64,000 nucleotides of DNA from Vitrella brassicaformis CCMP3155 (GCA_001179505.1 CDMY01000265.1:62001-126000), one strand, 5' to 3'. Positions 12,473-64,000 are shown, numbered from the stretch's first letter. Numbers and translations: made by a program. The notes: generated by a model not told the origin, from the letters alone.

Positions 12473-12506
<34 letters not shown>

Positions 12507-17212: not shown

Positions 17213-19746
17213 TCACCAGTCGGGCGGCTGGCCCAAGCAATTCAAGATTGGTAGCGGTCCTTCGCTCGAGTTGCGGCCACCCACCGCCTCGTCGCCTCCT
17301 GACGGCACCTTGCTGCTGCCCGCGTCGATGTCGCTCTCTCCCTCAGTGACAATGATGTTGATGGTTTCGTCGAAATACTGAGGCACGTGTGTGTCGCTCG
17401 CCTTGGGGCACTGTGCGTCATCAAATCGACCGACGCGACGGCTGCCAGACACCTGTCCGTACAAGCAGCAGCAGAGGCAAGGCATATGAACTTCTCTTCC
17501 CTCTCTCTGATGCGATGGCCCGACTCGCTTGCTTATTGCTTACATGGAATGATTTCTCTGACGAGTCCAGCTGGCTGTCCGCCAAATCGCCGTAGTTCGC
17601 GAGGCAGAAGAAGGTGGCGGATATGTCTCGCGGCGGCAGCTCACTGGAGAACAACTTGACATTGGCCAGCTCGAGGGCGGAAAGATCGCTATGGCGCCGG
17701 CCCAGGTGGAGCTTGGCATCACGCGGAAGCGACCCGCCGGCCTGAAGAGAAACACAAACAGCCGGCCTTTCAGAGGCACGTGTGGCACCAAGACGACCAT
17801 ACCATGAAGTTTATTTCTTGCACTTGTTCCGCATCCCGGTATGCCACCAGCCGCCCGTCGATCGCCCGCCACGACAATGCGAGATGCACCCACCCACTGT
17901 GCCGCCCGCCCCCCTCATCCGAGGAGCCAAAGGGCGAGAGGAAATCGTTCGCTGGACAGCATGAGTCTTCCCTCTCTCGGGATGTCTTGGCCTCCCAGAA
18001 GCGGGCGAACTGGACGTCATTGCCGTCAAGCGTCACCATGAGGTGAGGTCCCGTGGCCGCAATGCCGATCGACACCAGTGCCGGCTCGTCTGCCCGTGTG
18101 TAGCTGAGGTACTCGAGTCGATCGGGTGTGGGGTCGTGGCGTACCCACAAGGCGATTGTCATCTCGTGGAGGCGGGAGAAGGACGGATTGACTGCGGAGA
18201 GGGGGAGGGGACAGCTTCTGGGGGAGAAGGGATGGCTGAACGAGGGTGGTGGGGGTGGGGCATTGTTGTCTGTCATGGGATAGTACATGGGATCTCTCAC
18301 GGGCGTGCTGCCCTCCTGAGCCCACGCATCTCGCTCTCCCAGCGGCCCAAAGGAGAACCTCACGCCTATCACGCCAGAGATACATGAACACACTGCGCTG
18401 CCGCCTGTCTGTCATTACCATCGTTTGGTCGGTAGACTCGGAAGTAGTCGACTTTCAGGGTGCCGGGCAGGTTGCTCTCGCTCATGCAGTGAGTGATGTG
18501 CTCGGTGATGATGGCAGAGAGCCAGTAGTGCATCGGCATCAACTCCTGAATCTTCAGAGCAGACCAGTCCCCAGTGCCGACGACCTCGCCGTCCAAGAAC
18601 ACTCTCGATTGGATGGGGGTGTGCTCCAGCCCCCAGACGTGCCAGTCGTCCGTCAATCGCCAGCCTGGATGCAGCCGCCGTCCGGCCACGTACATGCGTG
18701 GGGGTGGCCACCACTTGATGTGGTTGTACTGGTAGCTGTTAACGCCGCTGTTGATCTCGAAGACGTCGATTTCCTGTCGTGGATGGTCGGTGTTGTTGCA
18801 CACTGCACACTTGGTCTTGTCGATGGAGTTGGCAGTGGCCGCCCAGAAAGACTGCCAGTCGAGAGACAAGTCATCGCAGGCAGACACACATAAATGAATG
18901 GCACGTTGGTCAGTTCCTGCGTGTGTGTGGTCAGGATGTTCACACGGTGATGCCGACCCGACGGCAATGTTTGCCCACTGGGTGTGCACACACTCACTTG
19001 CCAGAAGCCCGGATACGCCCACGACTTGATCCGCGCCTCGAAATAGCCGAAAGGAAGAGGCTCACGGGTGATCAAGCCGCCCTGAGTGCCGGAAACCAAC
19101 ACACGCACACTGTTGCACCTGCCCAGGACCAATTGGTCTCGTTGGTCCGCTCACCCCTGCGTATCGGACGAGCTTGTCCTTCATGTACCGTGGGTACTGC
19201 AGCCTGTCCATGTGCACCTGAAGCGCACCATCCCTGACCTCAACCTGACGACACAAACACCACGCAAAGGGAACAAATGCCTTGTGTATCCGCAACCGGC
19301 GTCCCTCGGAAGCCGACTGACTTGTGAGGCCATCTGGCAGCTGGGCGCGAAGTCAGGAGAACACTCGTCGCGATACATCCATCTGCAGTAAAGATTGCTC
19401 TTTCATCTGTGCCTGTACGTATGTCTGTCTGTCTGTCTGTCTGTCTGTGTCTGTGTGTGTGCGTGTTTTGGTGCTTGGCTTGACGTGGTCTCGTTGACTC
19501 GGGACGAGTCAAACTCGTCCGACCAAGAGAGGTTCTCATATCCCGCCGGCACATATGGAGAGTGACCCACGGGCTCAGCAGCCACGCCACCCCGGAACAC
19601 ACCTGCAGACAGACAGACAAACAAACACCCATCCCAAGCCTTTCCTGCTTCAGTGTCCTCCCACCTGACACGACGGCCACGAACACGGCAAGGCAGCCCA
19701 TCCGCCAGGCACTGCAGCACGACCGCCTCTTCCGCTTACGACGCAT
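17213..19746 (-). CDS. Glycoside hydrolase family 16 with C-terminal LamG/pentraxin-like domain and N-terminal hydrophobic leader
   Basis: Spliced exons give LSWSDEFD, VEVRDGALQV, FGYFEARIK, GFWQSFW, catalytic EIDVFE (18756-18773), WHVWGLEHTP, FLDG and LKVDYFRVY. These are followed by MTIALWVR, GWVHLALSW, GRLVAYRD and LHLG...LANVKLFSSELPPRDI (LamG-like). Confidence 0.86.
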
Positions 19747-19949
19747 TCGAGAACATTCGCTGTACCACCACACCAAACCGCGCGAAATCCGAAGACGTTG
19801 GAGAAACGGCGGGCCAAGTTTCACGCGATATACGCTCTAACCGCACCTTGGGACGGCTCCTTTCTGCTCCTCTTGACTCATTCATGCACTGGACGTGACG
19901 CTCCTGATACTTCTGTTGCCTGTTTTGATGTCGTAATTGTCGCCAGTAG

Positions 19950-21879
19950 ATGCGGTCGTGTGGCTATCAACCATTCCGCCGGCTGCAGCACTCCCCGGCC
20001 CACAGCATGACACTCTGCAGCGGTGCCCCGCCCACTCTTCTGCAGCTCAAGAACGGGCTCATCAGTCCTCATCGCAAAAGTCACAGCCACCAGAACGGCT
20101 TTGCAGCCAACGGCTTGGGTGTCTGCAACGAGCAGCAAAAGCGATATGTGCAGCGGAGTGGGGTCGGCAAGGGGAGGGGGAGGCCCACGAGTGGACAGCC
20201 TCACTATGGGGACAGTGCGAGAGCCGAGTTCCCAGAGGCCGACTCTGTGCATGTGATCTACGACAGCGAGAGTGTGCTGGTCGTCTCCAAGGTGAGAGAA
20301 GACAAGCAGGAGGGAGGGAGGCAGGGAGAGAGGGAGGCAGGCACACCGACCGACACATATCCATTCAGAGTTTGCTTGTCTGTGCTTATGTATGCAGCCG
20401 TGTGGCGTTCACCCGTCCCTCAATTTGGCCCCCTCCAGTCGGCGCTCCCCCGACACCAGCGACTCATCCCCCTCGCCCCTGCCCTCCACCGCCGACCCCA
20501 GCAGCCCCACAGAGCACGCCAGCTCGGACACATCCACGCGGGAGGAGAGCAGAAGGGCCTCGCCGCTCCGCCGCTCGAGAGCCAAGGTCCCCTCATCGAT
20601 GCTGCCCTGCGTGGGGCAGCTGCTGTGCCGATGGCACGGCAAGCTGGGGCTCGATGGCGAAGTCAAGGGTGGGGACCGGCTGCTGAATGTGGGCGAGCCG
20701 CTGGAGAGCGGGGTGTCGGGCATTTACGTTATAGCCAAGGGGAGGAGGTGAGAAAGAGGCGATGGGTGGGCGATTGGGCGATTTGCGTGATGCCAATATG
20801 GTGCTGTCTGTGGCTGTTTGCGCTCGTCAGGTCACAGATGGAGGTCGAGTACTTCTGGGCAACCCGTAGAATCAGTCGGGTGAGCTGGGCGTCTCGTGTC
20901 TTGTGCATCCATGGTCCGTGCAAGTGTAACACATGTGCCCGGTTGATTCAGATCTATCTGGCTCTGCTACATGGACATGCGCCTCTGACGTTTGTGCATT
21001 GCCGCACGCCCATCTGCAAGCCCACAGAGGGATGCGAGGAGGGGAGGGTCGCCAACACGCAGATTGAGGGAAAGGTGAGTGACAATGGCCTCGCTGTGTG
21101 TGTGAACGTGTACGTCTGTGATGCCTTCCTTATTCACTGTGCGTGCAGTTGGCGTCGAGCCTGATCCTTCCCTTGATCCACGGCGAGTATCTGGGCAGCC
21201 CCGTCACTCTCGCGGAGCTGAGGCCAATCACTGGTACCCAAACGAACAAAAGAAGGAAACTTCTCTGTGGATGAGTGCGTGTTGTTTGTGTTATCCTCTC
21301 TGTCAGACCGTCGGCATCAGCTGCGGCTCCACACGATGGTCATCGGACACCCAATCGGTGAGACGAAACACCCACAGCAGCATGTCCGCTGGTTGCTCTT
21401 CCCACTTGTGTGTGGTCCGGTGTTCAGTTGGCGATCGTCTGTATCTGAAGGACAGGCGTATCGAAGGTAGGTACAGCAATCCCCCTGGCTGCCCACGGCT
21501 GATGCTCCACTCGTGGCGGCTGCGTCTCCACCTGCCGCCCTCCCCGTCCCCCTCCCTCTCACACACCGACCTCCTGTCGGATCACCCCATCGACCTCATC
21601 TCACCTGACCCCCTCTCGCCCTTCATCGGCATGCCCATCCGCCAGTCGGCCGACTGCCAGTTGCTTGCATACCATGACCCGGATGGGTGGTTCCCATTCT
21701 ATGAGCAGCCTGAGGGTCTGCTGATGGACGGCGACACGGGGGAACGGGGCGGGGAGGTCGGTGAGGGCGGGTGGTGGAGGCGGTACGTGCCGCGACAGGA
21801 GGGGGTGCACGAAAGGGATCTAAGGTATTCCGATCATCACACTATGTTCGATCATATCGAGAAGAGATCATACAGATAG
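19950..21879 (+). CDS. RluA-family pseudouridine synthase-like protein with degenerate catalytic motif; possibly mitochondrial
   Basis: VIYDSESVLVVSKPCGVHP (motif I), GEPLESGVSGIYVIAK (motif II position), [39 protein letters not shown] and RLMLHSWRL (motif III). The N-terminus is R/S-rich and poor in acidic residues. Confidence 0.82.
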
Positions 21880-23343
21880 ATCGGATAGGCTTTTTTTTCG
21901 CACGTCCTTCGCTCCACATACACTTGCAATGGATGTAGCTCTACGGGGGGCGACACACTCTTGCATGGCATGTCTGTTGGATGTGCTGCATGGCGTAGAA
22001 GAGCAAGGTTTGTCCTTGCCAGCGGCAAATGGACAGTCATGTACGTGTGAGCATCGGGTTGTCACTTTTTGCCATTCCGCGGCATGGATGTTTTACAGCC
22101 TTACATGTGTGTGTGCGTGTGTGTGCATTGACACACACATCCTAGCGCTCATGGAGAGACCGGATGGCGGGAGGTAAGGGGTGTGTCAAAATGACAGGGC
22201 TCTGCTGCTCAAGTTTTGTGCATGCATGCAAAGCGATCGATCGCCCCCGGTGAGAAGCAAAGCGGCTCCTCCGTGCATTTTGGCCATTGTTGCAACACTC
22301 AACAGCACCTTCCTTGCTCCACAACTCCACCCGACTCTGTCTGCTGTGTAATGAGCATGGCGTCGAGGCCCGAGGAAGGGTTCTCTCGCCGTCTCCGGGC
22401 ATCCATTCGCATGGGAAGCGGCCGCATTGTGTCGAACATCCGTGCTGACGAGGGTGCTGTGCGCGTGCCGCCTGCTGTGGTCGCTGCGGATCCCGTGGCC
22501 GCAGTGCAGCGGACTCCCGACACCAACACTGAGAGGTCGCGGCGCGAAAGAAATTCTGCATGGCATGAGCTCGAGCGTCACAGCCTTTCTCATTTGTCTC
22601 TGCAGGGCTTCGCAAGGGGACAGGACCGCGCGTCAGCAGGTAGACAACCAGCCGGAAGAGGAGCCGAAGACGAAGAAAGAGGAATAGACGCGATGATGAG
22701 TACAACAGGTCAGCACAACCGGCAGACAATTCTATGCGTGCCTATCTTGTGTCTGTATATGGGATGTGATACGCAGGGAGTGACTGACTGGCGTGTTTTG
22801 TAGTGAGTGAGTGGCACCCTTCGTGCATGGTGAGTGCTGGCGGCTGACGGTCCGGCGTTTATCTTTTGAGATAGACGAGTACAGGAGACGAATGTCGGAG
22901 AGAGAGAGAGATACGAGACAGAGAGGGTGACAGGCTGAGGGCACCAGAGACCAAACCATGAATGCATGCCATGCCGGTCGTTTCGTGTCGCACATTATAC
23001 ATAATTGAGTGACAGCAAAGAAAAGGAAAGAGAAGAAAAGAGCGAGACACTAATGGGTCAGAACAGAAGCTCACGAAATTCAATCAACAGGTGAAACCGG
23101 CCAAGGAAATAAAAGCGTAGGCAACCATAGAGACACACAAGGATCGTATTCAGTAAGTACATCTCCTGTTCCCTTGCTGAATAGCCAGAGTATCATCATC
23201 ACCATTTCTACGGCAGCTCAGAAGCACTCATATTCCCTGATGATGTCAGAAACAAGGAGAGAAGACAGACAAATTGCCCTGCATGTCTCGAACCATTTGT
23301 CCAGCACCCTCGGGCGTGTTTCAGGCTCTCGGTGGCCGTCTCA

Positions 23344-24103
23344 TTAGTGTGTTCTCCTTGGGTCCTCCCCCATGCTCCTCCTACCTGCGTCTCGGTTTGC
23401 TCCGCGGACGTATGGGAGACAATCACATACCATTACCGGAAACAAAGCAGGAATGCATCTACAGCGACACCCATACCAAGCAGAGCTGCCGTCTTTCAGC
23501 GACCTCTCGGTGCAAGCGACTGCATGTGGGGTTGGCCGAATGGACTCTTGCGCGGCTACATCCGGTCCGGGAGGTCCGCCTCTCGCTGATCGTAATGAGC
23601 AGGCCCCGCAGTCATCCCGTCGCCGGCAGCAGGTACAGAACTGGCAGTGCCGTGAAGAACTGGACAGCACCTTCCCTTGACGAACCCACACGCCCAGAAG
23701 CCAAAGATGTTGGACGTACGCAACCTCCGATGCGGAAAGAGGCCCTCAGACGAGGCCGGTGCCTGTCCTTCTCCTCGGCACCGGTCCATTTGTAGCTGTG
23801 TGTGTGACAGTCGACATGATGTACCTGACACACCAGAGAAGAAGAGGACCGTCACGGGTCACTGCTGCAGCAAAAGGAAACGCGCAGGCAGCCCCCTGAT
23901 GATTGCAAATGAGGAGTGATTACCTCCGTGCTCAATGCACTGAGGACGTGAGGCTTTCCCTGCGAATTGGCGGGAGAAGGAAAGTATTCCCGTCTCGGCG
24001 GTTCACTGGGGGCGGCCCCCAGTCCGTGCGTCTTTTGTTTGGCAGCCTGAGCACTCCGCAGTTGCTTGAGTAGTGATCCTCCAATGAGATCATCCTCCCC
24101 CAT
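23344..24103 (-). CDS. Hypothetical protein, tentative; may continue to about 22150
   Basis: A first exon MGEDDLIGGSLLKQLR...LSTE is followed by a GTAATC donor, with plausible downstream exons. The reading frame is not securely reconstructed. Confidence 0.3.
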
Positions 24104-26325
24104 TCAGCTCCTTGTCATCTTCCTTCCTGTTGCCAGCCTTCTCATGGCATCATCGTCCGATGCCTCCCCCCAAACGCCCACCGCCTTGTCGGTCATGCAC
24201 TCCCCTCCAGCCCCAGGATGGCCGTCCTATACTGTCACACTGTCAGTGGATCAATCGGGGCGACTATGTTATGCTGCGGATGTGCTTCGGCCTTCTCTTT
24301 CCCTTATGTTGCCCTCTGCTCTCGGCATCTCGGTGGACGGCACTGATCTGGGGATTGATGTGGAGCTGGTCAGCAAGGAGGAGCAGCAAGTGAGGAAGAC
24401 CTATGCGACTCGCGGCAAGCACGACGTGGCTGAGGCCCACTACAGCCATGTCTCATTCACCCTCCGCCATCGCCCAACCACGCGTGTGTGGCACCTCCAC
24501 TTCCGCCTCTTCCCTGATGGCCTCTCATTCCGCTACTCTTTGCCCGCAATCAACGCGACATACGAGCCCCGCCATGTGATTCAGGAGACTTCACAATTTT
24601 CCTTCCCCTTCACGGCCGACGATGCGGCGTGGTTTTTCGAACGCGACAAACTCAGCCATTATGAGTTGCTCTCGTACGCCGGCGTGTTTCGGACGGCTCC
24701 GGCCAGCTCTCTCTCGTCTCGCCCGAGGAGTAGAGGGCCTTTGTACGGCGCACCACTCATCTTCCATGATGTCTCGGCGGGTGCCGGCCCTTTCCCCTAT
24801 CGGCTGCTGACCGAAGCTGCCCTGTATGAGTACCCGGGGATGCGCTACATAGCCCTCCCCGACAACAACACATTTCGTGCCGATCTGGCCGACGAGACTG
24901 TCGCTCTTTCCCTCCCACTCCCCACCCCATGGCGCGTCATCCTCCTCGCCCGCACACTCGACGAGCTGATCAACAGTGACGTCATCACGTCGCTGAACCC
25001 CGCACCCGACCCTGACCTCTTCCCTTCTTACCTGTCCTACGCCAAGCCAGGCCGCTCCGTGTGGCGATGGTGGCGCTATGACACGGGCACGCCAGAGGAG
25101 GAGAAACAGTACATTGACGGTGCGGCTGGCCTGGGATTCGAATACACGACGATCGACGACGGCTGGGCGGACTGGCCCGACAAGTGGGCCACGATGAAGG
25201 CGGTCTGCGACTATGGACGCGAGAAGGGGGTCGGGGTCATGCTGTGGGAGGACTGTGCCAAGGTCGAGGATACAGCGGATGACTACGCCGACCTCAGACT
25301 GTTTCTCGACAATGTCAAGGCGACAGGAGCCGTCGGTGTCAAGTTCGACTTTTTCAACAAGTAAGGCAAATTGCACATAGTCGTGGCCTCCTCACCCAGA
25401 AACACCTTTTTTGTCTTGCAGTGAGACAGTCTCCCGAGTTCGCTTGCAAACGAAGATGCTTGTTGAGTCGGCCAAGAGAGACCTGTTTATCAACTTCCAT
25501 GGCATTCAAGTAGTGGAGCCACGAGACGACATTCCGAGCGATAAGCACTCCATGCCTCTGGCTTGTCTGTATCCATCAGAAACCGACTGGTGAGACACGG
25601 AGGTTCCCCAATGAGTTGACAAGAGAGGCGGTGTGGGGCATGGAGATCAACAAGATGTCAGATGACTATCCACCGATCGAGTCCTCCCACAACGCCGCAC
25701 TGCCATTCACGAGGTTTGTGTTGGGTGCGGCCGACTACACGCCACTCGCACTGGCCAAGGAGTGGCGAGGGCCGACCACTGTGGTGAGAGCGCCCATACC
25801 AACGAGACACGGACGACTGAGAGGAGACACGATGTGTGCTGCTGTCTTCAGGTACATCAGATTGCCTTGCTGGTGTTGTTCGACTCGCCCCTCACGACCA
25901 TTGCAGAAGATCCATCCTTCATTCTCGACCCCACGCAGCCGCACGCGGCCGCCCTGGACGTCATCAAGGCCATCCCCACCATATGGCAACATACACGAGT
26001 CCTGCCGCCGAGCAAGATAGGCGAGCTGGCCGTCATGGCACGCAAAGCCCACAGGGGAGACATGTGGTTCCTGGCGGCCATCAACGGCAAGAGCGAGACA
26101 CAGACAATTGATGAGATTCCGGTTCATTTCCTGGACAGTGAGAGGGCGTATGAGATGGTCATGATCTACACAACTGAGACAGAGGGAGGGGAGGGGGGGC
26201 AAGTGAAGAGGGAAGAGGGCAGGTGGGACCCCGGCCAGCAGAGAGCATTGAAGAATGTGCGGCTGCTGGGGGGTGATGGGCTTGTTGTCATGTGGAGGCC
26301 TCTTGGTGGTGACCAGCTCACATGA
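24084..26325 (+). CDS. Glycoside hydrolase family 97 (retaining type), signal peptide; paralogue 1
   Basis: Signal peptide followed by LFPDGLSFRY, LLTEAALYEYPGM, PTPWRVI, KPGRSVWRWW, YIDGAA..GFEYTTIDDGW, GVKFDFF (Asp at 25347), INFHG, REAVWGME (Glu at 25625), HNAALPFTRFVLGAADYTP, HQIALLVLFDSP and PTIWQHTRVL..IGELAVMARK..WFLAAING. Three introns. Confidence 0.93.
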
Positions 26326-28597: not shown

Positions 28598-28834
28598 GAT
28601 GACGGGAGGATAGTTGTCCTTGGTGACGGCGACAGAGACGAGATGAGACGATGTCGCAACGATGCGACTGTAACAGTTGAAAAGAGCGCTTGCAGTGCAA
28701 ACTCGAAGCCGAATAAAGCTCTTGCGGACCTCTTCAGCGTTTTTCAGCGAGCTCAAAATGGGGGCCCTGGCCCCACTTCCGATCTCGGCATTCAACCCCT
28801 TCCCCGTCTTTATCTCCCCTGGGAATAGACCATC

Positions 28835-31800: not shown

Positions 31801-34800
31801 GTCCCCTCGACGATCCACTCTGCACGAGTGTATCCCAATTGCCCACAGTCAGTTTCCAAGACGTCAAGCCGGCCTGGGCGACCACAGCCCCAGACGACTG
31901 GACCCACTTCCTGGACAAATTTGCTGTTCCCTTTTTTGAGACCCTGCGGCTAAGCGGAGACAAGTATTACAAGGACGCGAGTGAGGAGAAGAAGAAGGTG
32001 TTCAGGGACTACCTTCCGACACTGGCGGTAAGGTAAGATTGGTGGCAGCGCTGCCTGCCCCTGCATCATCCATCCCCTGATCTCACCTGGTCTTTCCCAT
32101 CAGGTCGATGGCTACTACCTGCTGATCAACGTCGCGCGGCAGCACACTTCGCCTGATCTCGGGGAAACACCCATCCGCCGGCGCCTGATGCTTCAAGCCA
32201 CCCCCGAGCACCTGAGTGCAATGCAGGTGAGAGAGAAACAGGTGCACCTAAGTGGGTGAGTGTCGTGTGTTCTGCAGAAAACCACTGCGGAGGGGGCGGA
32301 CCTGTATATTACTCAAGTACAGCCCCCCGAAGTGGTCACCCCCCCAGCCGCCCTGCTCACGGAATCCGAGCAACTCATTGTCAAGATGAGCAAGGAGGCT
32401 GTCGAGGCGGCCAAGCAGTACGGTGACGCTTTCGTCAAGCTGCCCCTGCTGCCGCCCCTGCTGCCCTGGGGCTACCTGCAGCCCGCCATCCCCAAGGCCC
32501 CAGCGGCCTTGCCATTCGTTCCCTCATACAAGCCATATGGCGCGGCATCTTTGGTCACAGAGGGGGAGTCGATGGTGGTATTCCCCACTCTACGGCAGAT
32601 GACGCCGCCCAGCGTTGGGGTGCCGGTGTATGGCGGGTCGAGTGAGGCGGTCAACATGGTGTTTGTCAGGGAGTATCGGGCCATCCTCTATACGAGGGAG
32701 AGGGAGGTCGACCTCACCGACGCGTGGCTACGGAAATTTGATGAGTTTAAGACACTAACCAGAGAGGTGACAGTCTACGCCAACTCCTTCCTCAAGGCTG
32801 TCGCCGTCAAGGTACTTAGGCAGACGATATCAGATCTCTGTGGCGCTTTCGATACTCTCGATTGATGCCATTCCTCTTATATCGTCAGGTGTACGCCAAG
32901 AGGCCTTCCTTCGACGGTGAGCAGTACAGCGCGTACGTCGATCTGGTCGCGATGTATGCTTACGGAGACCTCAGAAAGGTAGGTGCAGAGAGACAGAGAC
33001 ATGTACCAGATTCGCCCACTCACCCCGGCGATGTGATGTGCACTTATGGTATGTGAGCAGCTGATCGGCCACACGAGGGAGTACAGTGACCTGGGCAGCG
33101 ACGAGGCAAGGAGGGGCATCGAGGACTACATTGACAACATCCTCTACCGCACAAGTACAAACTGCAGCACACAGGTTGCACATCGCCCATGCTTTCGTTC
33201 ATGTGTGTCTGTGTCTGCGTGATTTTCTCAGCCGAGGAGCCCCACACTAACGTCATGTGGATCCGCCCCGAGCTGCTGGGCGTCAGTCTATATCAGCTAG
33301 AGGAGTTCAAGAACCCGCAGTACACCGACTTTGAGAAGCTGGTGAAAGACACCATCATCAAGGAGGACATCAAGTCTGAAGACGCGGACAAGGTGATCAG
33401 GGCGATGCCCGGGCCCATCGTGATGCCAGGTGACAGTGAGATGGGGCCCGACGTCTTCAGAGACAGAGCCACGGCATTCTTCGACGCCATTGCCAAGGAG
33501 CGCAGCAGGCTTGGGGCTGACCCAAAACGGCGGAGACTGCAGGCTGGAAGGGACCCACTCGCTGTCGTGGTGAGCTGGATGGCGATCATTCACAGAGAGC
33601 GATCAATACCGGCTCATTGGCCCGCCCGTGTGTGTGTGTTCTGTGTGCTCAGGACCACTATCTGGTGCGTCGAACGGAACGGGCGCTTCAGGCCCTGGCA
33701 GTCCCTATGCCTGCTTTTGTTCCGGGTGGCATCCCGGCTTCGCCACCTCTTTCATCCCCCGAAGCGGGAGCCGCGGCCGCTCTCAAACTCCTCCAAGAGG
33801 CCGATATCTTCTCCACGCAGCAAGGGCAGCCCCAACCCGACATGCTGATCCCCGGCCTCGATGAGGGCCCTCCTCCGATGTTCGCACCACCTCAGGCCAG
33901 TCCCTTGCCGGGGCTGTTGGGTCCGCAGCAGACCGGCGTCCCTGCTCCCCCGCCCCCACCCACCCCACCTGTCGGCCCAGGTCCACCCCCAGATCCCCTT
34001 TCAGCCATGTCCCCCGCTGGTGCGACCCCCATGGCCGTGCCGCCCGCCCCAGGGGGACTGGTGATGGGGCCTCCGACCGACGCGCTGACACCGATCGAGA
34101 CAGCCTTCATCGTGCAATTCTACCTGCAGCCATCATCAGGCGCGCCCCAGCCGCCGTTGGGGTGGGCCGGACCGGTTCCAAGCAAACTGGATGATTTCAA
34201 CTGGTCGGGCAGGAAGCAGGAGCTGGGGCAGATGGTCGACGCATTCGTGGCCACGGTTGCCACAAAGAAGGCCGAGGTAGGCATGGCGTGGCATGGCATT
34301 CGCGAGACATCCATCCATAGCGCGAGACGTGTGTCTGCCTGTCTCTCAATCGCTGCACAAATGTCTGCCCGTCTGTCTGTCTGCCCTGCAGTATGCTGCC
34401 CAGTATGCGGACGACCCCATGAGAGTGCAGACCTTCAACGACTGGCTTTACAGCCGCACACTCATCGAGGCCGGCCGCGTGGCAAGCTTCGTGCAAGGCG
34501 AGTCCGAGGGCTACATCGGCACCATAGCCGTGCAGAGATTCATCAAAGAACGGGTCAGTCGCCCGACTGGCCGGCCCGGCAATGCCTAGACAGAGACACG
34601 TCTCACCATGTCTCGTGTGGCTGGTGGGCGATGGTGTGCAGGCGGACAAAGTGTACAACGAGGGTGTGCAGTTCATGGAGAGCTGGAGCACCCCCCTGTT
34701 CTCCACCAGCAGGCTCTTCTACAGCCAGCCCGATTGGCAGCAGGTCGACAACGGCCCCCCAGCACTCGGCCTGGAGGTCATCGCACAGTCGGCCGCAGAG

Positions 34801-49430: not shown

Positions 49431-49592
49431 TGGAAAGGGCCAGAAGGGAAGAGATCTGCACCTCTTTCAAGCTCGCAGTCGCCAAAAGCGGTTCGGGGTG
49501 AGCCTTTCCCACGCCCTTTACATTGCACCTGGATTGGCTGCATGAATCGGTAGTGCTGTTTGCGGGAGCGAGTTGCGAGTGTCGTTCGTAGC

Positions 49593-53383: not shown

Positions 53384-53522
53384 GCTGCTGATGCAGATCT
53401 CCAACAACAACTCCTTAGCTGAGCTGGCAGGCTTTCCCCAGCTCGCACCTTTTTGGGGTGTGGTTTGCGCTGTTTCCGGCTGCAAGGGCATTCGGCCTGC
53501 GCGAAGCGCTTCCCTTGCCGAC

Positions 53523-55782: not shown

Positions 55783-56673
55783 CTAACACAACACACAACA
55801 CCACACACCCACAGAGAAAGATGTGCCTCGTAGTTGAGTTGAAATGTACCATAGCCTTGCAACTGCTGCCTTACGGCCTGCCTGCCTGTCTGGCCCCGTG
55901 TGTGCCTGTCAGAGTCTCTTCTGCACCGACTGCAGGAGGAGACAGCGCACACAAGCGGGCTTGGCGATCGCTTGACACTTAGCCTACATAGCCTACATGA
56001 GTGCGTGAGCGTCTTTTTCTCCTCCCATTGCTGCTGCTGGATGGCTGGATAACACAACTGACACGGGAGAGTGAGTGAGAGAGGCTGGGTGGACGGGACG
56101 GGAGGGGACGGGAGGGGCGTCTCTGCTCTGCTGATGCAGATGCACACGCCGAGGTGGGGCTCTGGCGGGTTGCTCACACACAGACACACACACACACACG
56201 CACGCACACACATACACGCACACAGAGGTGGCTAGATGGCTGGCTGCACATCTCATTTTGGCATGGTTCATCGACTGCGCTGCGTACTTTTTTGTGCGTG
56301 GGCTGTATGTCTTTCTGTACAAACACACACAGCACGAGCCAACTTTTTGAGGTGGATTGGATCATGTTGGCAGTGGTGGCGAGAGACACACGGACCTATA
56401 TATATGTTATATATGCACCGCACCCATCTTGTGCAGCATTGGCTGGCTGACTGATGTCAGCCATGGCATGGCGGCCACCCATCCACCATCGATTCACCCA
56501 CGCGGACAGACACGGTACGGACTGACATCCTATGCACACAATCTAATCGGCACACACAGCGCCCCTCCCGCAGTCACACAGAGGACAAAATAGGCGGCGG
56601 GGCACCCACGCACTCTTCCCTCCTTCCCTCCCTCGTGCTTGTACCTGTCTTGTCTATCTATCTAGCTATATGT

Positions 56674-59600
56674 TCATCTTTTGAGCTGCCGCAGCTCCCG
56701 CAGACTCGACCGCACCTGACACACAGACACACAGATGGATCGGTGGCTGGATGGATGGATCAATGTGCTGCGCGAATCGCAGCCACTGACCCTGGCGATG
56801 GTGGCGTCGAGTTCCATCTGGCGTCTCTCGAGCTCCATCCGACGCTTTCGCTGAGCTACCGTCTTACCTGCACACACACACACGCACAGGCCACAAGAAG
56901 CATACAACAAGCCAGGTGGCCATTCTGCCGCCACACACTCCACTCCGACCTGCGCTGCCCGATGGGAACTTGCTGAGCTCAGAGTCGATCATGGCATTCT
57001 CCATGTTCAAAGTCTGTGTGAGACAACCAACCGACGAACAAGAACGAATGCGTCAGTCACCTGCCGCGTGTATAGCAGTGTCACCCCCTTTCATGCTGAC
57101 TGACTGACCAGCAGCTGTTGCTCGAGGCTCTGCAGCCTCTCGCCCTGCTCCTTGACCTCCCCCAGCCCCATCCCCTGGTTCAGAGCCGCACCAACGCCCG
57201 TCGCCCTCCCACCCAGATTGGCACCCGCATGGGGACTGCTGCCGCTCAACTCCCCAGACCACCCACCAGCCGTCGATGGCCTCACACCACCACCACCACC
57301 GGGCTGCTGCTGTGGGGGCTGCTGGTACACACTGGCGATGGGTGGTGGCGTGACGGTACTGGTGTTGACCTGGTGGCCCATCACGCCGCCGTAGTCTGGT
57401 GTGGGCGGCTGTGAGGGGTATGGGTTGCCGTATGGTGGGGATGGCTGCTGATGAGCCAGGGGTGGTGGTTTGGAGGGCTGGAAGGGGGAGGGCTGGGATG
57501 GCGGTGGGAGGGGCGGGGAGCGACCCACATCACGATACAGAGATGGGTATGCCGGCTCAGCTGACAGACGGCCCTCTGCAACACGGAATGCTTGCAATGA
57601 GGTTGTGTGTGCATTTGTATTCCATGGTACCTTGTCCGGACAGCTGTGTGACGTATGGGCTCTGGGCCATGGCTGGTCCGCCCACAGGCGGGCTCTGTGG
57701 TGGCTGTGCCTTCTTGAGTGCGTGCAGCTGCTGCCTGAGGTCGAGCAGCTCGTTGGACTGCTCCTGCAACTGACGCTGGGCCTTCTCGTGCTGATCCCTA
57801 CATATATGCACACACATACACCAATGGAGTCCCGTGCTCACTCCTGCACCCACTTGCACCCACCCCACCCACCCGCGGACCCACCTGTATCTCTGTGCGT
57901 CGCGCATTGCAGTCTCATTCTGGGCCGCCAACGAAGCCGACTTGCGCCTGGGACAGATAGGGAGACAAACGGAGAATACCGTAGACTTTCAATCAACGAA
58001 GCAAACGAGCCCACCCCACCCTCTTGACTCACTTTTCGTTTTCTAGTTCTCCCTTGGCCTTCTGCGACTCTTTGCGCATCGACTCGCTCTCCTGCATCGT
58101 CTGAAAAGACAAGAGAAACAGACAGCAGCGGCATGGCCTTTGCAACCCACGTCTGTCTGTCTGTCTGTCTGTCTGTAGGTTTGTATGTGAGGTGGTGGGT
58201 GAGTGGATCAGATCACTGGACCTACCTGTGCCATTTGTGCGAGTTCGTGTTTCCTGGTTTTGTCTCGGTCCTTCATCTGGTCTATCAGCGTCTCGTTCTT
58301 CGACTGCAACTCCTCACTGTCAGTCGAGTCAGTCAACCAACGGCAGCCACACAAAGAGACAGACACCCATCTTCGATGATAGATAAGTGCGTGTGTGAGT
58401 GAGTGAGATGGGCGGCTTGCGTCATTTGCTCGCTTAGATACCATCTCTTGGCTTCCTCCTCAGCTTTCTCCAGGTCAGTCTTGAGCTTCTTGGCCTCCTT
58501 GCTCAAACTCTCGTACTCACCCTCAAGCTAACACCAACACACGCCCACACACACACGCGGAGAGACACCATTTGGGTCCCGAGAGAGTGCGAGAGGGGTG
58601 TGGTTTGATGTGATATAGACAAGCACCTTGTTGAGGCTCTGTGTGGCGGTTTGGTGTTTGGTCTGGAGCTCCTTGAAGTCGGCCTGCAGATGCTGAATCT
58701 CACGCTCCTGCGTAGTCTGACAGACAATGGCATGCTCGAGCACAGTGTTGCTTGTAGGAGAGATGGCTATCTGTCTGTCTGTGTGTCGTCCCTCCCTCCC
58801 TCCCTCCCTCCCTCGTTCACCTTGGTCTCCTCTAGCGACTCCACCTGCCCCTGAAGCACCTTCTGCACACACGTACCAGGCCAGGTGGGTGCACGCACAC
58901 GGCTCGCTCATTGGATGCCCCACTCTCCCCCCACCTTTGTGTGTGCGAGTGCGGCGCAGTTGGCCTGGACGTCCTCGTTCTCCTTCTCGAGTCGTCGCAC
59001 GGTGTCCTTGTGTGCGGCGAGCAGTCGCGTGGCCTCCTCATATGTCTCTTGCAGCGTCTGGACAGTGCGCATGAGCTCCTCCTTCTGCTGCAGCGTCTCG
59101 TCCAGCCGCTTCTCCAACTGGTTCTTGCGCAACATCACCATCTATAGAGAGGGAGAGAGGGACACAAAGGAGCAAACGAATCAAGGACTGGCGCACTCTT
59201 CATGTCTTGTTTTCGCTGGCTCTCTGACCTCGTTCTTGGCGCTGAATTCGGTGACTTGTCTGTTTGCCGCCTCCAGGTTGGCCTGCAGGGACGACACCTT
59301 GCTGTCCAGCTCACGGGAAGACGACTTGGACTCACTGCATCCGCAGGGAGGGAGGGGAGAGAGGTGTGGAAGTTTCCTTTGCGTATCGTCGTGTTTACGT
59401 GGTCTCTTTGGCGGCTTCCTTCTCGAGTATGCGCATCTTCCGGTCGCACTCGGCCTTGACGTTGTCGATCTCCGCCTGGGCCTGCCGACGAAGCTGCACA
59501 TGCACAGAAGCACAGAGACACGCACGTCCATTCACACAGAGAGAAGTGTGTTGTCTTTTGAAACATAACCCGCACACACACCTGCTGTATGCGTTGCTCT

Positions 59601-61301
59601 AACTGCTGGGTGTAGAACTCCCTCAGCCGGGCCTCGTGCTCTTTCTCCTTCTCCTCCAGCCAACTCTCAAGCTCCTCCTCACTCTTGGACCCACCTCCTA
59701 CCCCACCCAAGCCGCCACTCCCACTGACACCCACGCTACTGCCCACATCAGGGGGCGACCGATCCTCCCTCCGAGGCCCACCAACACCAACACCCGCACT
59801 CCCCCTCTCGCCCCACGCCTCACGCGCCCCAGCCGATCCCCGACCCTCACGTGTGCGCAAAGGCGGCGCACGGGGCGACCGACGGCTGGGCTCTCCTGGG
59901 GACGGTGAGGGCGGCAGCCGTCGGCCTGCGGGGTGGAGGGGAGGTGAGGGGGGATGAGAGGGCATGCGGCCGCCGTAGCTGTACGGCATCTCCTCCTCCT
60001 CATAGGATGCATAAAGGTCATAGGCGTACTCGTCCTCCATCTCCGGCGAGGAACCGTAGTAGTCATACGACGAGCCGTAGCGGTACTCCTCCTCTCTCGG
60101 GCTCCGCCGGTACTCATAGATGGGCTCGTTGTAGTCGACTACAGGGTCAGAGATGGTGTGGTGGGGGTCCCTCCCCCGCCCCCTGCCCGGCGAGAGCCGT
60201 CGTGGCTGCTCGTGCGGTTGGAAGTACGAGGGTGGCGGGTAGAGGTCACGCTCGCGACGGCCGGTGGGCGGCAGGCGCGCAGGGAGGGGGTCCTGGTACC
60301 TGGGAGGGGGGCCGATGGAGGGGTAAGGCGACTTCGGCCGGAGAGCCGTCTCGGATGCTGACTTGCCGCTGCCCAGAGATGGCTCTGGTTGATTGGTCAA
60401 CATAACAAAGATGGGGCCAGACAGCGATTGAAACTGGGCCTCTCCGTGTGTATGTGTCTCACTTGGTCGAGGTGGCCTCTGATCACTGCGATGGCCGGGT
60501 GGCGGCGCTGGCACTCTGTCAATCATGTCTAGAATGAGGTCCACGTCCCTCTCGTCCCTCACTGCAACCCTCTCCCTCTCCCGTGAGACCCGCCTTCTGG
60601 TGTCCCCATTATAGGTCTCCTCAGGGTGATCCTCCTCCACAGCTACGCCCACATGCTCCTGCTCCGCGGCTGCACAACACACACACACGGTCAGCAATGA
60701 AGGCGAATCATTATGTCAGCTGATCTTCTGTGGTCTCAGTCGCCTACCTTCGCTGGATGCGCCTCTAGCGTACTCCCGCACGTCCCTCTCCACATCCCTT
60801 TCGTCGTCATCTATGATCTCGTCCCCCTCATCCATATCAGCATACTCCAGCCCCTCAACATCGTCTCCCACCTCCTGCGACCTTCGCCGCTCATCGGCCT
60901 CGTAATGTGCGATGTCCTCGCGTGGCAACGTGTCGGTGTGAGATCTCTTGAAGGGCCCGAAGTTCGACGGTAGGCGGTCAAGGGGGCGGGAGGAGGGGCG
61001 GGGATGCAGGGTGGGGTCCAGCGAGAAGGCCCTCTCGGGCAACGGACGAGGGAAGGGGTGCCCTGCACCACACACAGCAACAGATGGACAATTTCTCATG
61101 TCTGATCCATCGAAACGACTCCTTGGTGTTCTCTTGCCGAGACCACCACCATTCTGCCTCTGTATGTGCCCTGCTCTTGCCATCTTCCCTCGCCCTTCTC
61201 TCCCTCCGCGCCCGTGGCCTACGTGAATTGGAGAGGCCTTCCGTGTGACTGCGCGTGTATGGCCGCTGAGCCTCAAGGAAGTCCGTCTTGATGGACGTCA
61301 T
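56674..61301 (-). CDS. Long coiled-coil protein with Pro/Arg-rich N-terminal half; C-terminus resembles MPHOSPH9-type centriolar proteins
   Basis: Heptad exons from 57750 to 59690. Terminal exons read LNMENAMIDSELSKFPSGSAGKTVAQRKRRMELERRQMELDATIARVRSSLRELRQLKR*. The family assignment is recalled similarity only. Confidence 0.6.
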
Positions 61302-61390
61302 GACCTCAAACAAACACTGAGGCCGCGGGACTCCCTGCGGGTACGGGTTAGAGAGCTCTCCTTCCGTGGACGAAATAACGGTACATTGAA

Positions 61391-64000
61391 ATGAGGCGCT
61401 GTGTTGTGTTCCTTTGTGTCGCTGCCGGGGTGCTCACACAGGCGAGCAGAGGTGAGGTCTCCACTCCTCCCCCCGCTGACGACACGAATGAGGCTGCCGA
61501 CACGCCTTCCCTGCTGTTCGGTGGCCCCTACACTCCTGCCGGTCTCGGGGAGTTCTCTCTTCATTCCTACCTGAGCGGCATCGAGAAGGCGGCAAACGAG
61601 CCGGCCACCTGCACAGACTGCGTCACCCTCGACACAACCCACGACCCCGGACGAAAGGGACAGCAGACCGTCACAGAAGTGACGGACAACAAGGTGCCGC
61701 CTCTGCGGCCTCCCCTTGTGCACCAGGGGGACAAGGCCACCTATGAGGTGCAGATCACCGTGTCGGCTGCTGGGGAGCTGACGTATTCGGTGCACGAGAC
61801 GGATGGCGACGGGCGGCGAGGGAATCAGCTGCTGCGGGAGGCGGCATTGGGGATCACTGTGGATGGGGTTGACCTGGGGCAGGATGTGCACATCACTTCA
61901 GTGGCTCGGCAGCCGATTGAGTATCGCTATCGCACACGAGGCAAACACAACGAGGCTTACAACCACGGTGAGCCGACAAAGGGAGAGAGAGGCACCTGCG
62001 TGATGTACATTCCTGCCTGCCTCTCTGCCTGCCTGTCTGTCTGTCTGCAGGCAACGAGTACACAGTGACTGTCAAGAACAAGCAGGCGTCAACAGACTTT
62101 CTGGTCACCTTTCGTCTGTACGATGAGGGGATGGCATTCCGATACAGCCTCGCGGACGGCCAACGCAAGCACAACAAATCGGTGCAGATTAACGGCGACA
62201 GCTCCTCATTCGCTGTGCCGAGGGATGGCATCGTTTGGTGAGCAAAGTGCCGCATATGCCATGCCGACCAACTCACGGGCATCTTGTCTGTGTGAGGGAC
62301 GTTTGGTCAGGCACTTCTATCGCGACCTCAACTACAGCCGTGAAGCCAAGAAAAAGAAGAACTTCAACTACTCGGGCCCCTGGCAGTCCCACCCCGTCAG
62401 CAAGGCCGGCAAGTCCATGCCTGTGTACGGCCCTCCAATCCTCATCGACACGGCCGACGGTAAGTGGGGTTCGGATGAGCACTACAAGTACCTCCTCATC
62501 ACCGAGGCAGCGCTCTACAAGTTCACGGGCATGCGCCTGGAGCCGGAGCCCGACGGTGTGTTCCGCGCCGATCTGACCGAGAAGCACCTCGACGTCCCAG
62601 CATCCTTTAAAACGCCCTGGCGAGTCGTGGCCATGGCGAGGAATCTGGACGAGCTCGTCAACACGGATATCATGACGCACCTCAACCCGCCGCCTGACCC
62701 CAGGCTCTTCGCATTCCGATACGGCGACGTGCAGGCCGGGGCGGCGGATGGGCGGAAGAGGCGGGCCGTCTACTATCCCTCCTGGATCAAACCTGGCCGC
62801 TCTGTCTGGTCATGGTGAGTGCTACCTGCGATCGCTGGGATTCTCTCCGTTTTACATCTCCCTCCTCCTTGTCTGCTTGCCTGCAGGTGGACCAAGGAGA
62901 CTGGTACGCCCAAGCAGGAGCGGGAGTTCGTCGACTATGCGGTCAAGCTGGGGTACGAGTACACGACACTCGATGTGGGCTGGGAGCGGTGGTACGCCGA
63001 CGACGCCATGTTCCCTAAGCCCAAGAAGCCCAGCAAGGCCTATCCCCACAAAGACCCCAGGGAGGCCCTCGCGCCAGTGCTGCTGCCCCTACCTGAGGCA
63101 ACCGGCAACAGAGAAGACAGTCGGCCCACAGCCCAGCACAAGTTCGACTTCGAGCGGCGAACCAAGGCCCGCTGGCCCCTTCTTCGTGACTTCTGCGAGT
63201 ACGCCAACGACAAGGGTGTGAAGGTCATCGTGTGGAAGATGGCGGACGAGCTGGCCATCCCGGGCAAAGACGGCAGCTACTCGAGGATGGACAACTTCTT
63301 CGACAAGGTCACACAGCATGGCGCGTCGGGCGTCAAGATCGACTTCGTCAGCCGCGAGACACTCGACAGGGTGGAGTTCGAGACGGCGACTTTCATTCTG
63401 GCCGCCAAGCACCATCTCATGATCAGCTTCCACGGCGTGCACAAGCCACACGGTGAGGCCCGCCGCTTCCCCCACGAGGTAGGCCGGGAGGCCGTGTGGG
63501 GCAACGAGATCGAGAAGTTCGTCAAGCACAACGGGGCCGATGTGGACCACATCCCGGCCAGCCACAATGCCGCCCTGCCATTCACCCGCTTTGTGGTCGG
63601 CCCGGGCGACTACACCCCCCTCGTCCTGCGGCCAGATGCCAGGGGGCAAACCACAGCGGTGCGGTGCGCTGCGCTAGCCACTTCCACACAACCATGCCCA
63701 CACTCGTGCCGTGCCCGCCATCTCTCTTGATATCATCTGTGCCTGCAGGTGCATCAGATTGGCACGATGGTCTTGTTGGATTCGCCCATCATGACGGTGG
63801 CTGAGCACCCAGAGGTGATCCTCGACGACAAACGGCCCCATGCCCGTGCCGTCGACCTCATCAAGGCCATTCCCACCACATGGGACCAGACGCACGCACT
63901 CAGGCAGAGCAGAATCGGACAGCTCGCCGTCCTGGCGCGTAGGAATGGTGGCACATGGTGGCTGGCGGCGCTGAGTGGACTCAATGAAGAGCAGACAGTC
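61391..64000 (+). CDS. Glycoside hydrolase family 97 (retaining type), signal peptide; paralogue 2, 3' end beyond the window
   Basis: Signal peptide MRRCVVFLCVAAGVLTQA, then RTRGKH, YDEGMAFRY, LLITEAALYKF, KTPWRVV, KPGRSVWSWW, FVDYAVKLGYEYTTLDVGW, GVKIDF (Asp at 63341), ISFHG, REAVWGNE (Glu at 63488), HNAALPFTRFVVGPGDYTP and HQIGTMVLLDSP. Confidence 0.93.

What the first reader, a model, noticed from the sequence alone, without database searches (positions are those of the whole stretch)
17213..64000. Bacterial-type secreted polysaccharide-degrading set (GH16-LamG plus two GH97) in a photosynthetic eukaryote
Seen: three CAZyme genes with N-terminal hydrophobic leaders at 17213-19746, 24084-26325 and 61391 onward. 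All are interrupted by host-style spliceosomal introns, and the GH16 and first GH97 are about 4 kb apart. Established: GH97 (SusB family) is overwhelmingly bacterial, and GH16 endo-glycanases work with GH97 exo-glycosidases in Bacteroidetes polysaccharide utilisation loci. Inference: these are horizontally acquired genes forming an endo-plus-exo glycan degradation or wall-remodelling system in a plastid-bearing alga. It could serve mixotrophic use of host or algal glycans, or opening of its own sporangial wall.
Basis: partly seen in the sequence, partly recalled or inferred. Interest (0 to 1): 0.8.

Follow-up and report, generated by a model that had tools for sequence, protein, structure and literature searches.

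The report
Bacterial-origin GH97 glycosidases in Vitrella
The coral-associated alga Vitrella brassicaformis carries real, intron-containing genes for two GH97 glycosidases, whose family came once from bacteria and then multiplied, and for a GH16-lectin enzyme shared with its relatives, but nothing shows that the three work together as a bacterial-style sugar-degrading unit.

Summary
The window is Vitrella brassicaformis CCMP3155 contig CDMY01000265.1 (100% identity).

All three genes are real.
- **GH16-LamG:** minus strand, 19746/19701 to 17213, nine exons. An MMETSP transcript confirms six of its introns.
- **GH97-1:** plus strand, 24084-26325, four exons. RNA-like contigs confirm two of its introns.
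- **GH97-2:** plus strand, 61391 onward, cut by the window end.

Each starts with a hydrophobic leader.

**GH97 origin.** Bacterial origin is supported. All five Vitrella GH97 genes sampled form one clade (UFBoot 99 / SH-aLRT 99) nested inside a bacterial subfamily. The donor is unresolved and is not specifically Bacteroidota. No other eukaryote was found. A shared phase-0 intron in four paralogues shows that intron gain came before the duplications.

**GH97 type.** Both genes carry the retaining-type signature (KFDF/KIDF, HG, conserved Glu pair). They are therefore alpha-galactosidase-like, not SusB-like.

**GH16-LamG.** It has the same architecture in Piridium and Chromera, so it is inherited vertically within chromerids. 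Its deeper origin is unresolved.

**The "endo-plus-exo set" is not supported.**
- A pseudouridine synthase gene lies between GH16 and GH97-1.
- The two genes are on opposite strands and have different histories.
- The other GH97 and GH16 paralogues examined are not linked.
- GH16 genes do neighbour this GH97 subfamily in 10 of 80 bacterial loci, but they form a GH16 clade apart from the chromerid one.

The scan has flagged further GH97 loci elsewhere in this genome.

The parts
17213..19746 (-). GH16-LamG gene (Vitrella CEL98210.1 / P0106). Exons are approximately 19701-19663, 19600-19484, 19381-19319, 19241-19155, 19081-18998, 18851-18417, 18363-17803, 17741-17538 and 17446-17213. An alternative in-frame ATG lies at 19746.
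   Evidence: P0106 and the MMETSP transcript protein P0070 were mapped onto the window. Pfam Glyco_hydro_16 and Laminin_G_3 hit P0070. Exon ends are within 1-2 nt where codons are split.
18756..18773 (-). GH16 catalytic motif E-I-D-V-F-E (ExDxxE)
   Evidence: The motif is intact.
17538..18363 (-). LamG / concanavalin-A-like domain, in exons 7-8 of the GH16 gene
   Evidence: Laminin_G_3 scores 23.0 bits on P0070, below the cut-off of 27.6. It scores 50.8 bits on the Piridium orthologue P0107.
19950..22687 (+). Intervening, unrelated gene: pseudouridine synthase (PseudoU_synth_2, 538 aa). It is not part of any glycosidase set.
   Evidence: Annotation, mapped through. Five GT..AG joints appear in the RNA-like run X1.
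24084..25360 (+). GH97-1 exon 1. It holds the signal-like leader, the GH97_N domain and the first half of the catalytic barrel. It ends in GVKFDFFN (25335-25358), which contains the putative nucleophile Asp.
   Evidence: An RNA-like contig covers 24142-24600, upstream of the annotated start at 24306.
25422..25509 (+). GH97-1 exon 2, with INFHGIQ (the HG motif of retaining GH97)
   Evidence: GT..AG joints 25360>25422 and 25509>25580 in run X1. Translation.
25580..25783 (+). GH97-1 exon 3, with TREAVWGME (25622-25645 covers REAVWGME). These are the equivalents of the Ca-binding Glu526 and the catalytic acid Glu532 of BtGH97a.
   Evidence: PMC2670981.
25852..26325 (+). GH97-1 exon 4 (end of the barrel and GH97_C), with the stop codon at 26323-26325
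   Evidence: Pfam GH97_C at 1.6e-11. Intron 25784-25851 is GTGAGA..CTTCAG, inferred by homology to P0001.
61391..61967 (+). GH97-2 exon 1 (leader MRRCVVFLCVAAGVL, an acidic linker and the start of GH97_N)
62051..62237 (+). GH97-2 exon 2
   Evidence: Homology and GT..AG frame logic. Not checked against RNA.
62311..62814 (+). GH97-2 exon 3 (end of GH97_N)
   Evidence: Pfam GH97_N at 6.2e-15 on piece 62123-62818. Boundaries.
62887..63658 (+). GH97-2 exon 4 (catalytic barrel). Motifs are GVKIDF at 63329-63346, SFHGVHK at 63425-63445 and REAVWGNE at 63485-63508. It holds an extra stretch of about 55-65 aa relative to its homologues.
   Evidence: Pfam Glyco_hydro_97 at 5.3e-39. Motifs, the extra stretch.
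63749..64000 (+). GH97-2 exon 5 (VHQIGTMVLLDSP...), which runs off the window
   Evidence: Its phase-0 intron sits at the same position (TTx|VHQ) as in GH97-1, P0001 and P0110.

Best explanation
This is an ordinary nuclear region of Vitrella brassicaformis. It holds members of two glycosidase families that entered the lineage at different times.

GH97-1 and GH97-2:
- They are deeply diverged paralogues (about 36-38% identity) in a Vitrella-specific GH97 expansion. At least five genes were sampled here, and other scan notes list more.
- The expansion descends from one old bacterium-to-eukaryote transfer.
- After transfer, the ancestral gene gained at least one spliceosomal intron. That intron is still shared by four paralogues. 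The gene then duplicated and diverged quickly. A eukaryotic ER-type leader was also acquired, but its timing was not established.
- By their motifs, the products are Ca2+-dependent retaining alpha-glycosidases of the BtGH97b kind. Asp in K(F/I)DF is the likely nucleophile, the second Glu of RE-x4-G-x-E is the acid/base, and HG replaces the inverting HE.
- The most likely activity is alpha-galactosidase or a related exo-activity in the secretory pathway, wall or medium.

GH16-LamG:
- It is a divergent GH16 endo-beta-glycanase with an intact ExDxxE centre, fused to a concanavalin-like lectin domain.
- The fusion is shared with Piridium and Chromera, so it predates Vitrella.

Linkage. The closeness of GH16 to GH97-1 is most likely coincidental.

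Shown: gene identity, introns, transcription of GH16 and GH97-1, the GH97 phylogeny, the motifs.
Inferred: secretion, substrate, timing of the transfer, independence of the genes.
For: - The window is identical to CDMY01000265.1 and is flanked by eukaryotic genes: Aa_trans, Peptidase_S41, Mito_carr and PseudoU synthase.
- Pfam domains were found on the pieces.
- RNA evidence comes from MMETSP transcript P0070 and from GT..AG joints in run X1.
- In the GH97 trees, the Vitrella rows form one clade. Support is SH-aLRT 100 with 99 rows and UFBoot 99 / SH-aLRT 99 with 62 rows under LG+C20 PMSF. The clade is nested several supported nodes inside bacteria.
- Only Vitrella proteins carry a eukaryotic source among the 66 hits and the top 120 hits. 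The nearest Atlas clusters are 100% Bacteria.
- The phase-0 intron is shared at TTx|VHQ.
- Retaining-type motifs match those described in PMC2670981.
- GH16: the Piridium orthologue is 65% identical, Chromera P0079 has GH16 plus Laminin_G_3, and the chromerid rows group together.
- Paralogue neighbourhoods show no GH16/GH97 pairing.
Against: - GH16 ORFs lie within 6 kb of this GH97 subfamily in 10 of 80 bacterial loci, about seven independent lineages. A functional or ancestral link is therefore not absurd.
- The GH16 backbone is unresolved, with support as low as 21.
- Red algae (Pyropia, PMC7423979) and gut fungi reportedly have GH97. Their sequences were not in my trees, so a route through a eukaryote such as the red-algal endosymbiont is untested.
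- Absence from Chromera and Piridium rests on searches limited by length window and candidate caps.
- The window genes entered the trees only as exon pieces. The GH97-2 pieces are long-branched.
- No signal-peptide predictor, expression level or enzymology was available.
Confidence: 0.75

Rival explanations
1. GH16-LamG, GH97-1 and GH97-2 form a co-operating endo-plus-exo glycan degradation or wall-remodelling system, kept near one another because they work together. This would be a eukaryotic analogue of a bacterial polysaccharide utilisation locus.
For: - All three have secretory-type leaders.
- GH16 and GH97-1 are 4.3 kb apart.
- GH16 genes recur next to this GH97 subfamily in bacteria, in 10 of 80 loci, together with sulfatases and GH43- and GH127-like genes.
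Against: - A pseudouridine synthase gene lies between the two genes, and they are on opposite strands.
- GH97-2 is 35 kb away, and the long ORFs in between show no CAZyme.
- GH16-LamG occurs in Piridium and Chromera, where no GH97 was found.
- The other GH97 and GH16 paralogues examined are unlinked.
- The bacterial GH97-linked GH16s are a separate clade.
- In marine Flavobacteriia, GH16 pairs with GH3, GH30 and GH17, while GH97 pairs with GH13, GH65 and GH31 (PMC6298971).
Confidence: 0.1
2. A bacterial GH16-GH97 gene pair was transferred together into a chromerid ancestor. The present neighbourhood is a relic of that pair, and GH97 was later lost in Chromera and Piridium.
For: - Adjacent GH16-GH97 pairs exist in Alistipes and Paenibacillus ginsengarvi, and GH16 ORFs lie within 6 kb of this GH97 subfamily in Maribellus, Didemnitutus and others.
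- After the chromerids, the closest relatives of the chromerid GH16 look bacterial. They carry Por_Secre_tail, PKD, CBM96 and Golvesin_C domains.
Against: - The GH97-linked bacterial GH16s form their own long-stemmed clade (SH-aLRT 100), not sister to the chromerid GH16-LamG clade.
- None of the bacterial relatives has a LamG domain.
- The model needs two independent GH97 losses.
- An unrelated eukaryotic gene sits between the two genes.
Confidence: 0.05
3. The Vitrella GH97 genes did not come directly from bacteria. They were inherited from another eukaryote, for example by gene transfer from the red-algal ancestor of the plastid, or from an older eukaryotic GH97 lineage.
For: GH97 is listed among expanded orthogroups of the red alga Pyropia yezoensis (PMC7423979). 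GH97 transcripts occur in some anaerobic gut fungi (10.1101/487215).
Against: No non-Vitrella eukaryotic protein appeared among the closest hits in two searches. None appeared among the nearest Atlas clusters. The sister groups in the trees are bacterial.
Confidence: 0.07
4. Bacterial contamination or an assembly artefact.
For: The family is overwhelmingly bacterial.
Against: - The genes have canonical spliceosomal introns, some seen in RNA.
- GC content matches the rest of the contig.
- Eukaryotic genes lie on both sides.
- DNA contigs of three further runs are colinear across the junctions.
Confidence: 0.01

Closest known systems
BtGH97b (BT1871), the retaining alpha-galactosidase of Bacteroides thetaiotaomicron (PDB 3A24), and the related GH97 structures 5E1Q and 5XFM
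   Same: - Three-domain GH97 architecture.
- Asp in a K-x-D-F motif where inverting enzymes have K(T/S)GY.
- HG in place of HE.
- Conserved Glu pair for Ca2+ binding and the catalytic acid.
- These chains are the best or only PDB hits for the N-terminal half of the barrel.
   Different: - Sequence similarity is distant (phmmer E about 1e-31 to 1e-39 for the paralogue P0001).
- GH97-1 has KFDF rather than the published K/M-I/V-DF.
- The genes are eukaryotic, with introns and an ER-type leader.
- GH97-2 carries an extra stretch of about 55-65 residues in the barrel.
- The substrate is untested.
SusB / BtGH97a, the inverting alpha-glucosidase of the starch utilisation system
   Same: Same family and fold. 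The Ca2+ ligands Glu526 and Glu532 are conserved.
   Different: At the position of the SusB general base and Ca ligand Glu508 (the HE motif), the Vitrella genes have HG, and they carry the nucleophile Asp instead (PMC2670981). The HHET (Glu439) position was not examined here. They are therefore not SusB-type. No SusC/SusD genes or GH13 partners are present.
Marine bacterial GH16 enzymes (porphyranase B 3JUU, GH16 carrageenases, laminarinases)
   Same: A Pfam GH16 match, the ExDxxE catalytic motif, and the best PDB sequence hits (8e-7 to 1e-3).
   Different: Identity is very low, so no subfamily or substrate can be assigned. The C-terminal LamG fusion was seen only in chromerids.
Known bacterium-to-protist transfers of carbohydrate-active enzymes (for example rumen ciliates, PMC1413528, and anaerobic gut fungi, 10.1101/487215)
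   Same: A bacterial glycosidase fixed in a eukaryotic nuclear genome, with later intron gain and duplication.
   Different: The recipient is a free-living, coral-associated photosynthetic chromerid. The family expanded to at least five deeply diverged copies.

Membership tests
Glycoside hydrolase family 97 | GH97_N beta-super-sandwich, (beta/alpha)8 catalytic domain and GH97_C | tested here: met
   GH97-1 has all three Pfam domains above their cut-offs on the exon pieces. GH97-2 has GH97_N and the catalytic domain. Its C-terminal domain runs off the window.
Glycoside hydrolase family 97 | Conserved Glu pair (BtGH97a Glu526 as Ca ligand, Glu532 as catalytic acid) | tested here: met
   TREAVWGME in GH97-1 and REAVWGNE in GH97-2. 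In the paralogue P0001 the same motif aligns to TREGARGQE of PDB 5HQ4 (PMC2670981).
Retaining GH97 subgroup (BtGH97b-like) | (K/M)(I/V)DF with nucleophile Asp, and HG instead of HE | tested here: met
   GH97-2 has KIDF and FHG. GH97-1 has KFDF and FHG, so the Asp is present with Phe in place of Ile/Val. The stereochemistry itself is not testable here.
SusB-type inverting GH97 | HHET general base, K(T/S)GY and HE motif | tested here: not met
   HG, not HE, and K-x-D-F, not K(T/S)GY. The HHET position was not examined.
Glycoside hydrolase family 16 | Pfam/PROSITE GH16 domain with the ExDxxE (or ExDxE) catalytic motif | tested here: met
   PF00722 scores 25.6 bits against a cut-off of 22 on P0070. 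EIDVFE is at 18773-18756. The PDB hits are all GH16. The beta-jelly-roll fold was not modelled.
LamG / concanavalin-A-like lectin domain | Laminin_G_3 profile match | tested here: inconclusive
   23.0 bits, below the 27.6 cut-off, in the window's protein. The Piridium orthologue scores 50.8 bits, above the cut-off.
Polysaccharide utilisation locus (PUL-like gene set) | Contiguous, co-regulated CAZyme genes with SusC/SusD-type uptake genes | tested here: not met
   An unrelated gene lies between GH16 and GH97-1, and they are on opposite strands. GH97-2 is 35 kb away. The annotation shows no uptake genes or further CAZymes, and ten long ORFs gave no Pfam hit. Co-regulation was not testable.
Horizontally acquired gene (bacteria to eukaryote) | Nested with support inside a bacterial clade, absent from related eukaryotes, and truly integrated in the host genome | tested here: met
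   This holds for GH97: see the trees, the hit lists, and the introns and flanking genes. Absence from other eukaryotes is only as good as those searches.
Horizontally acquired gene (bacteria to eukaryote) | The same criteria applied to GH16-LamG | tested here: inconclusive
   Chromerid sequences group together and the next relatives look bacterial. The backbone is unresolved, and the gene is shared by three chromerid genera.

The most novel reading that the evidence does not exclude
The GH16/GH97 neighbourhood in Vitrella is not chance. It mirrors the recurrent GH16-GH97 adjacency seen in bacterial loci for complex, often sulfated, glycans (10 of 80 loci). The explanation would be either that a two-gene module was transferred together, or that selection brought the genes together for co-regulation. 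In either case a photosynthetic chromerid would run a bacterial-style endo-plus-exo module on coral or algal glycans, or on its own sporangial wall.
Probability: 0.1. Interest if true: 0.65.

Novelty: new member of a known kind. Interest (0 to 1): 0.38.

Why it matters
- **A clean, datable case of gene transfer.** A bacterial glycosidase has become a eukaryotic gene family: one entry, intron gain before duplication, an ER-type leader, then at least five deeply diverged copies. GH97 is otherwise almost unknown in eukaryotes.
- **A functional hint.** Vitrella, a coral-associated relative of apicomplexans, may have an expanded set of extracellular alpha-galactosidase-type enzymes. That bears on mixotrophy or wall turnover in chromerids.
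- **A contrast worth explaining.** GH16-LamG is kept in the parasite Piridium, whereas GH97 was not detected there.
- **Limits.** This does not reveal a new kind of system. Transfers of carbohydrate-active enzymes into protists are well known. The proteins are already labelled GH16 and alpha-galactosidase in public databases. I found no paper describing GH97 transfer into chromerids.

Tried and rejected
- Pfam on single GH16 exon pieces gave nothing except a weak Laminin_G_3 hit.
- The word search with the GH16 exon gave nothing.
- Both blanks came from fragmentation and divergence. The full HMMER search found the window's own protein and its relatives.
- The listing of cluster members on the top GH97 hits gave no taxonomy. 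The taxon-labelled genome scan replaced it.
- The look-up of encoding contigs for the transcript protein P0070 found nothing. P0106 worked.
- I first suspected another strain, because a Vitrella contig end (L001) is only 94% identical over two patches. It turned out to be a partial chimeric duplicate.
- Ten long ORFs between 35 and 61 kb gave no Pfam hit.
- Co-transfer of a GH16-GH97 pair was tested and found no support.
- Contamination was rejected.
- A plastid-targeting reading of the leaders was considered. The GH16 domain starts right after the leader, and the GH97-2 linker is acidic, so a transit peptide is unlikely. This is inference only.

Full report
**Where the window comes from**

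A locus fetched for the annotated GH16 protein is 100% identical to window 29701-7213 over 22,489 bases. The window is therefore Vitrella brassicaformis CCMP3155 contig CDMY01000265.1. GC content is even at about 55-63%. The annotated neighbours are ordinary eukaryotic genes: an amino-acid transporter, an S41 peptidase, a mitochondrial carrier and a pseudouridine synthase.

GH97-1:
- Pfam GH97_N (2.7e-32), Glyco_hydro_97 and GH97_C hit three exon pieces.
- RNA-like contigs of run X1 show GT..AG joints at 25360>25422 and 25509>25580. They also cover 24142-24600, which lies upstream of the annotated start at 24306.
- The third intron (25784-25851) follows from homology.
- The four exons sum to 2043 nt, in frame, and encode 680 residues from the ATG at 24084.

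GH97-2:
- Pfam GH97_N and Glyco_hydro_97 (5.3e-39) hit its pieces.
- Four canonical introns keep the reading frame. None has been checked against RNA.
- The gene runs off the window.

The GH16 gene is on the minus strand:
- Its exon pieces alone gave no Pfam GH16 hit and no word-search hit.
- The exhaustive HMMER search returned a 100%-identical MMETSP transcript protein (P0070) and, in the same cluster, CEL98210.1 (P0106, 607 aa).
- P0070 passes the Pfam GH16 cut-off (25.6 against 22) and has a sub-threshold Laminin_G_3 match.
- The ExDxxE centre (EIDVFE) is intact.
- The model has nine exons. The transcript confirms six of the eight introns.

All three N-termini have a strongly hydrophobic stretch.

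**GH97 is of bacterial origin, through a single old event**

- Two searches returned only Vitrella proteins with a eukaryotic source: P0001 (70% identical to GH97-1), P0109 and P0110.
- All other hits are bacterial or metagenomic, at 43% identity or less.
- A scan of one genome per prokaryotic species gave 498 relatives. The best come from Paenibacillus, Pirellulaceae, Cellvibrionaceae, Opitutaceae, Alistipes, Zobellia and others.
- In a 99-row tree, the six Vitrella rows form one clade (SH-aLRT 100) nested inside this bacterial subfamily. These rows are three database proteins and three exon pieces from the window.
- A careful 62-row tree under a site-heterogeneous model gives UFBoot 99 / SH-aLRT 99 for the same clade.
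- Its neighbours are Chloroflexia, Paenibacillus, Cellvibrionaceae, Verrucomicrobiota and Armatimonadota. The donor is unresolved, and the Bacteroidota rows lie outside this group.
- Nearest ESM Atlas clusters are 100% bacterial.
- GH97-1, GH97-2, P0001 and P0110 share a phase-0 intron at the same codon boundary (TTx|VHQ). GH97-1 and P0001 share two more introns. At least one intron was therefore gained before paralogues that are now only 36-42% identical diverged.
- Untested caveat: GH97 is reported in Pyropia and in gut fungi, and those sequences were not in my trees.

**What kind of GH97**

Gloster et al. (PMC2670981) separate two groups. Inverting members carry HHET, K(T/S)GY and HE. Retaining members carry (K/M)(I/V)DF and HG. 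GH97-1 has KFDF and FHG, and GH97-2 has KIDF and FHG. Both keep the Glu pair in RE-x4-G-x-E, which the paralogue P0001 shows aligned to the catalytic acid region of PDB 5HQ4. They are therefore retaining-type and alpha-galactosidase-like, not SusB-like.

**GH16-LamG has a different history**

- Its best relatives are Piridium sociabile (65% identical, with Laminin_G_3 above the cut-off) and the Vitrella paralogues P0072 and P0073.
- Chromera velia has two related proteins. P0079 carries both GH16 and Laminin_G_3.
- The chromerid GH16-LamG rows group together: 96-98 for window + Piridium + P0072, and 88 when the Chromera pair is included.
- The next relatives carry bacterial accessory domains, and none has a LamG domain.
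- PDB similarity is weak and spread over porphyranase, carrageenase and laminarinase. No substrate can be assigned.

**Is there a set?**

A spliced pseudouridine synthase gene on the plus strand occupies 19950-22687, between the two genes. GH16 and GH97-1 are divergent, on opposite strands.

| Vitrella gene | Neighbours within 10 kb |
|---|---|
| GH97 paralogue P0001 | FAD oxidoreductase, trypsin-like genes |
| GH97 paralogue P0110 | dynamin, MFS transporter |
| GH97 paralogue P0109 | alone on a 5 kb contig |
| GH16 paralogues P0072 and P0073 | no GH97 |

Ten long ORFs between the two GH97 genes have no Pfam match.

In the 80 bacterial loci, 10 carry a GH16 ORF within 6 kb of the GH97. In Alistipes and Paenibacillus ginsengarvi it is directly adjacent. 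In the three loci scanned, the neighbours include sulfatases and GH43-like or GH127-like genes. However, those GH16s form their own clade (SH-aLRT 100), apart from the chromerid clade. Co-transfer therefore has no positive support. In marine Flavobacteriia the usual partners are different (PMC6298971). A glycosidase gene lying a few kb from some other glycosidase gene is not improbable in a genome with several copies of each family. That is my inference, not a computed figure.

**Verdict**

The genes and their introns are confirmed. Bacterial origin is well supported for GH97 and open for GH16. The functional "set" is not supported.

**Left out on instruction**

I used exon pieces and database proteins instead.

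Noticed in passing
window 24428-25382 and 32335-33000; L001:9228-10856 (CDMY01001064.1, contig end): A second Vitrella contig ends in a chimeric partial copy. It is 94% identical to the 3' part of GH97-1 exon 1 and is joined directly to a piece of the downstream repeat-protein gene. There it is annotated as two short proteins, one of which is P0055. DNA contigs of runs X2-X4 carry the variant copy, with a junction at 24436, so it is real DNA and not only an assembly error.
   Followed up: partly
window 23235-23815: RNA-like contigs show CT..AC joints at 23235>23307 and 23235>23384, which indicates a minus-strand, alternatively spliced transcript. It lies in the gap between the pseudouridine synthase gene and GH97-1, where one search lists no gene. 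A further GT..AG joint at 22705>22774 lies beyond the annotated end of the synthase gene (22687).
   Followed up: no
window 24084-24306: The public GH97-1 model (606 aa) starts at 24306 and lacks the leader. The in-frame ATG at 24084 adds a hydrophobic leader. From 24141 onward the extra stretch is conserved with P0001, and an RNA-like contig covers it from 24142.
   Followed up: yes
window 10671-13344; L085:18208-22330: Both the window's GH16-LamG gene and its Vitrella paralogue P0072 have a PDZ/Peptidase_S41 gene 4-6 kb away. This may be an old segmental duplication.
   Followed up: no
window 63000-63200 (within GH97-2 exon 4): GH97-2 has about 55-65 extra residues between the GWERW and WPLLRDFCEYA segments, compared with all homologues. 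The stretch has no stop codon. It could be a real insertion or an in-frame intron.
   Followed up: no
L018:4284-7770, L007:5938-10402, L060:372-12724 and other bacterial loci: In bacteria, this GH97 subfamily often sits beside a distinct GH16 clade. In the three loci scanned (L018, L060, L007), the neighbours include sulfatases and GH43-like or GH127-like genes. This suggests a role in breaking down complex, possibly sulfated, glycans.
   Followed up: partly
P0071 (Piridium sociabile transcript isoform): The protein ends in CLLYTSPSPRD. That looks like translated sequencing adapter rather than real coding sequence (my recollection, not tested).
   Followed up: no
L002:6451-12638 (CDMY01000130.1): The closest paralogue of GH97-1 (P0001) lies head-to-head with a FAD-dependent oxidoreductase gene. 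Other notes of this scan flag the same pair, and also a GH97-GH31-GH97 cluster elsewhere in the genome.
   Followed up: partly
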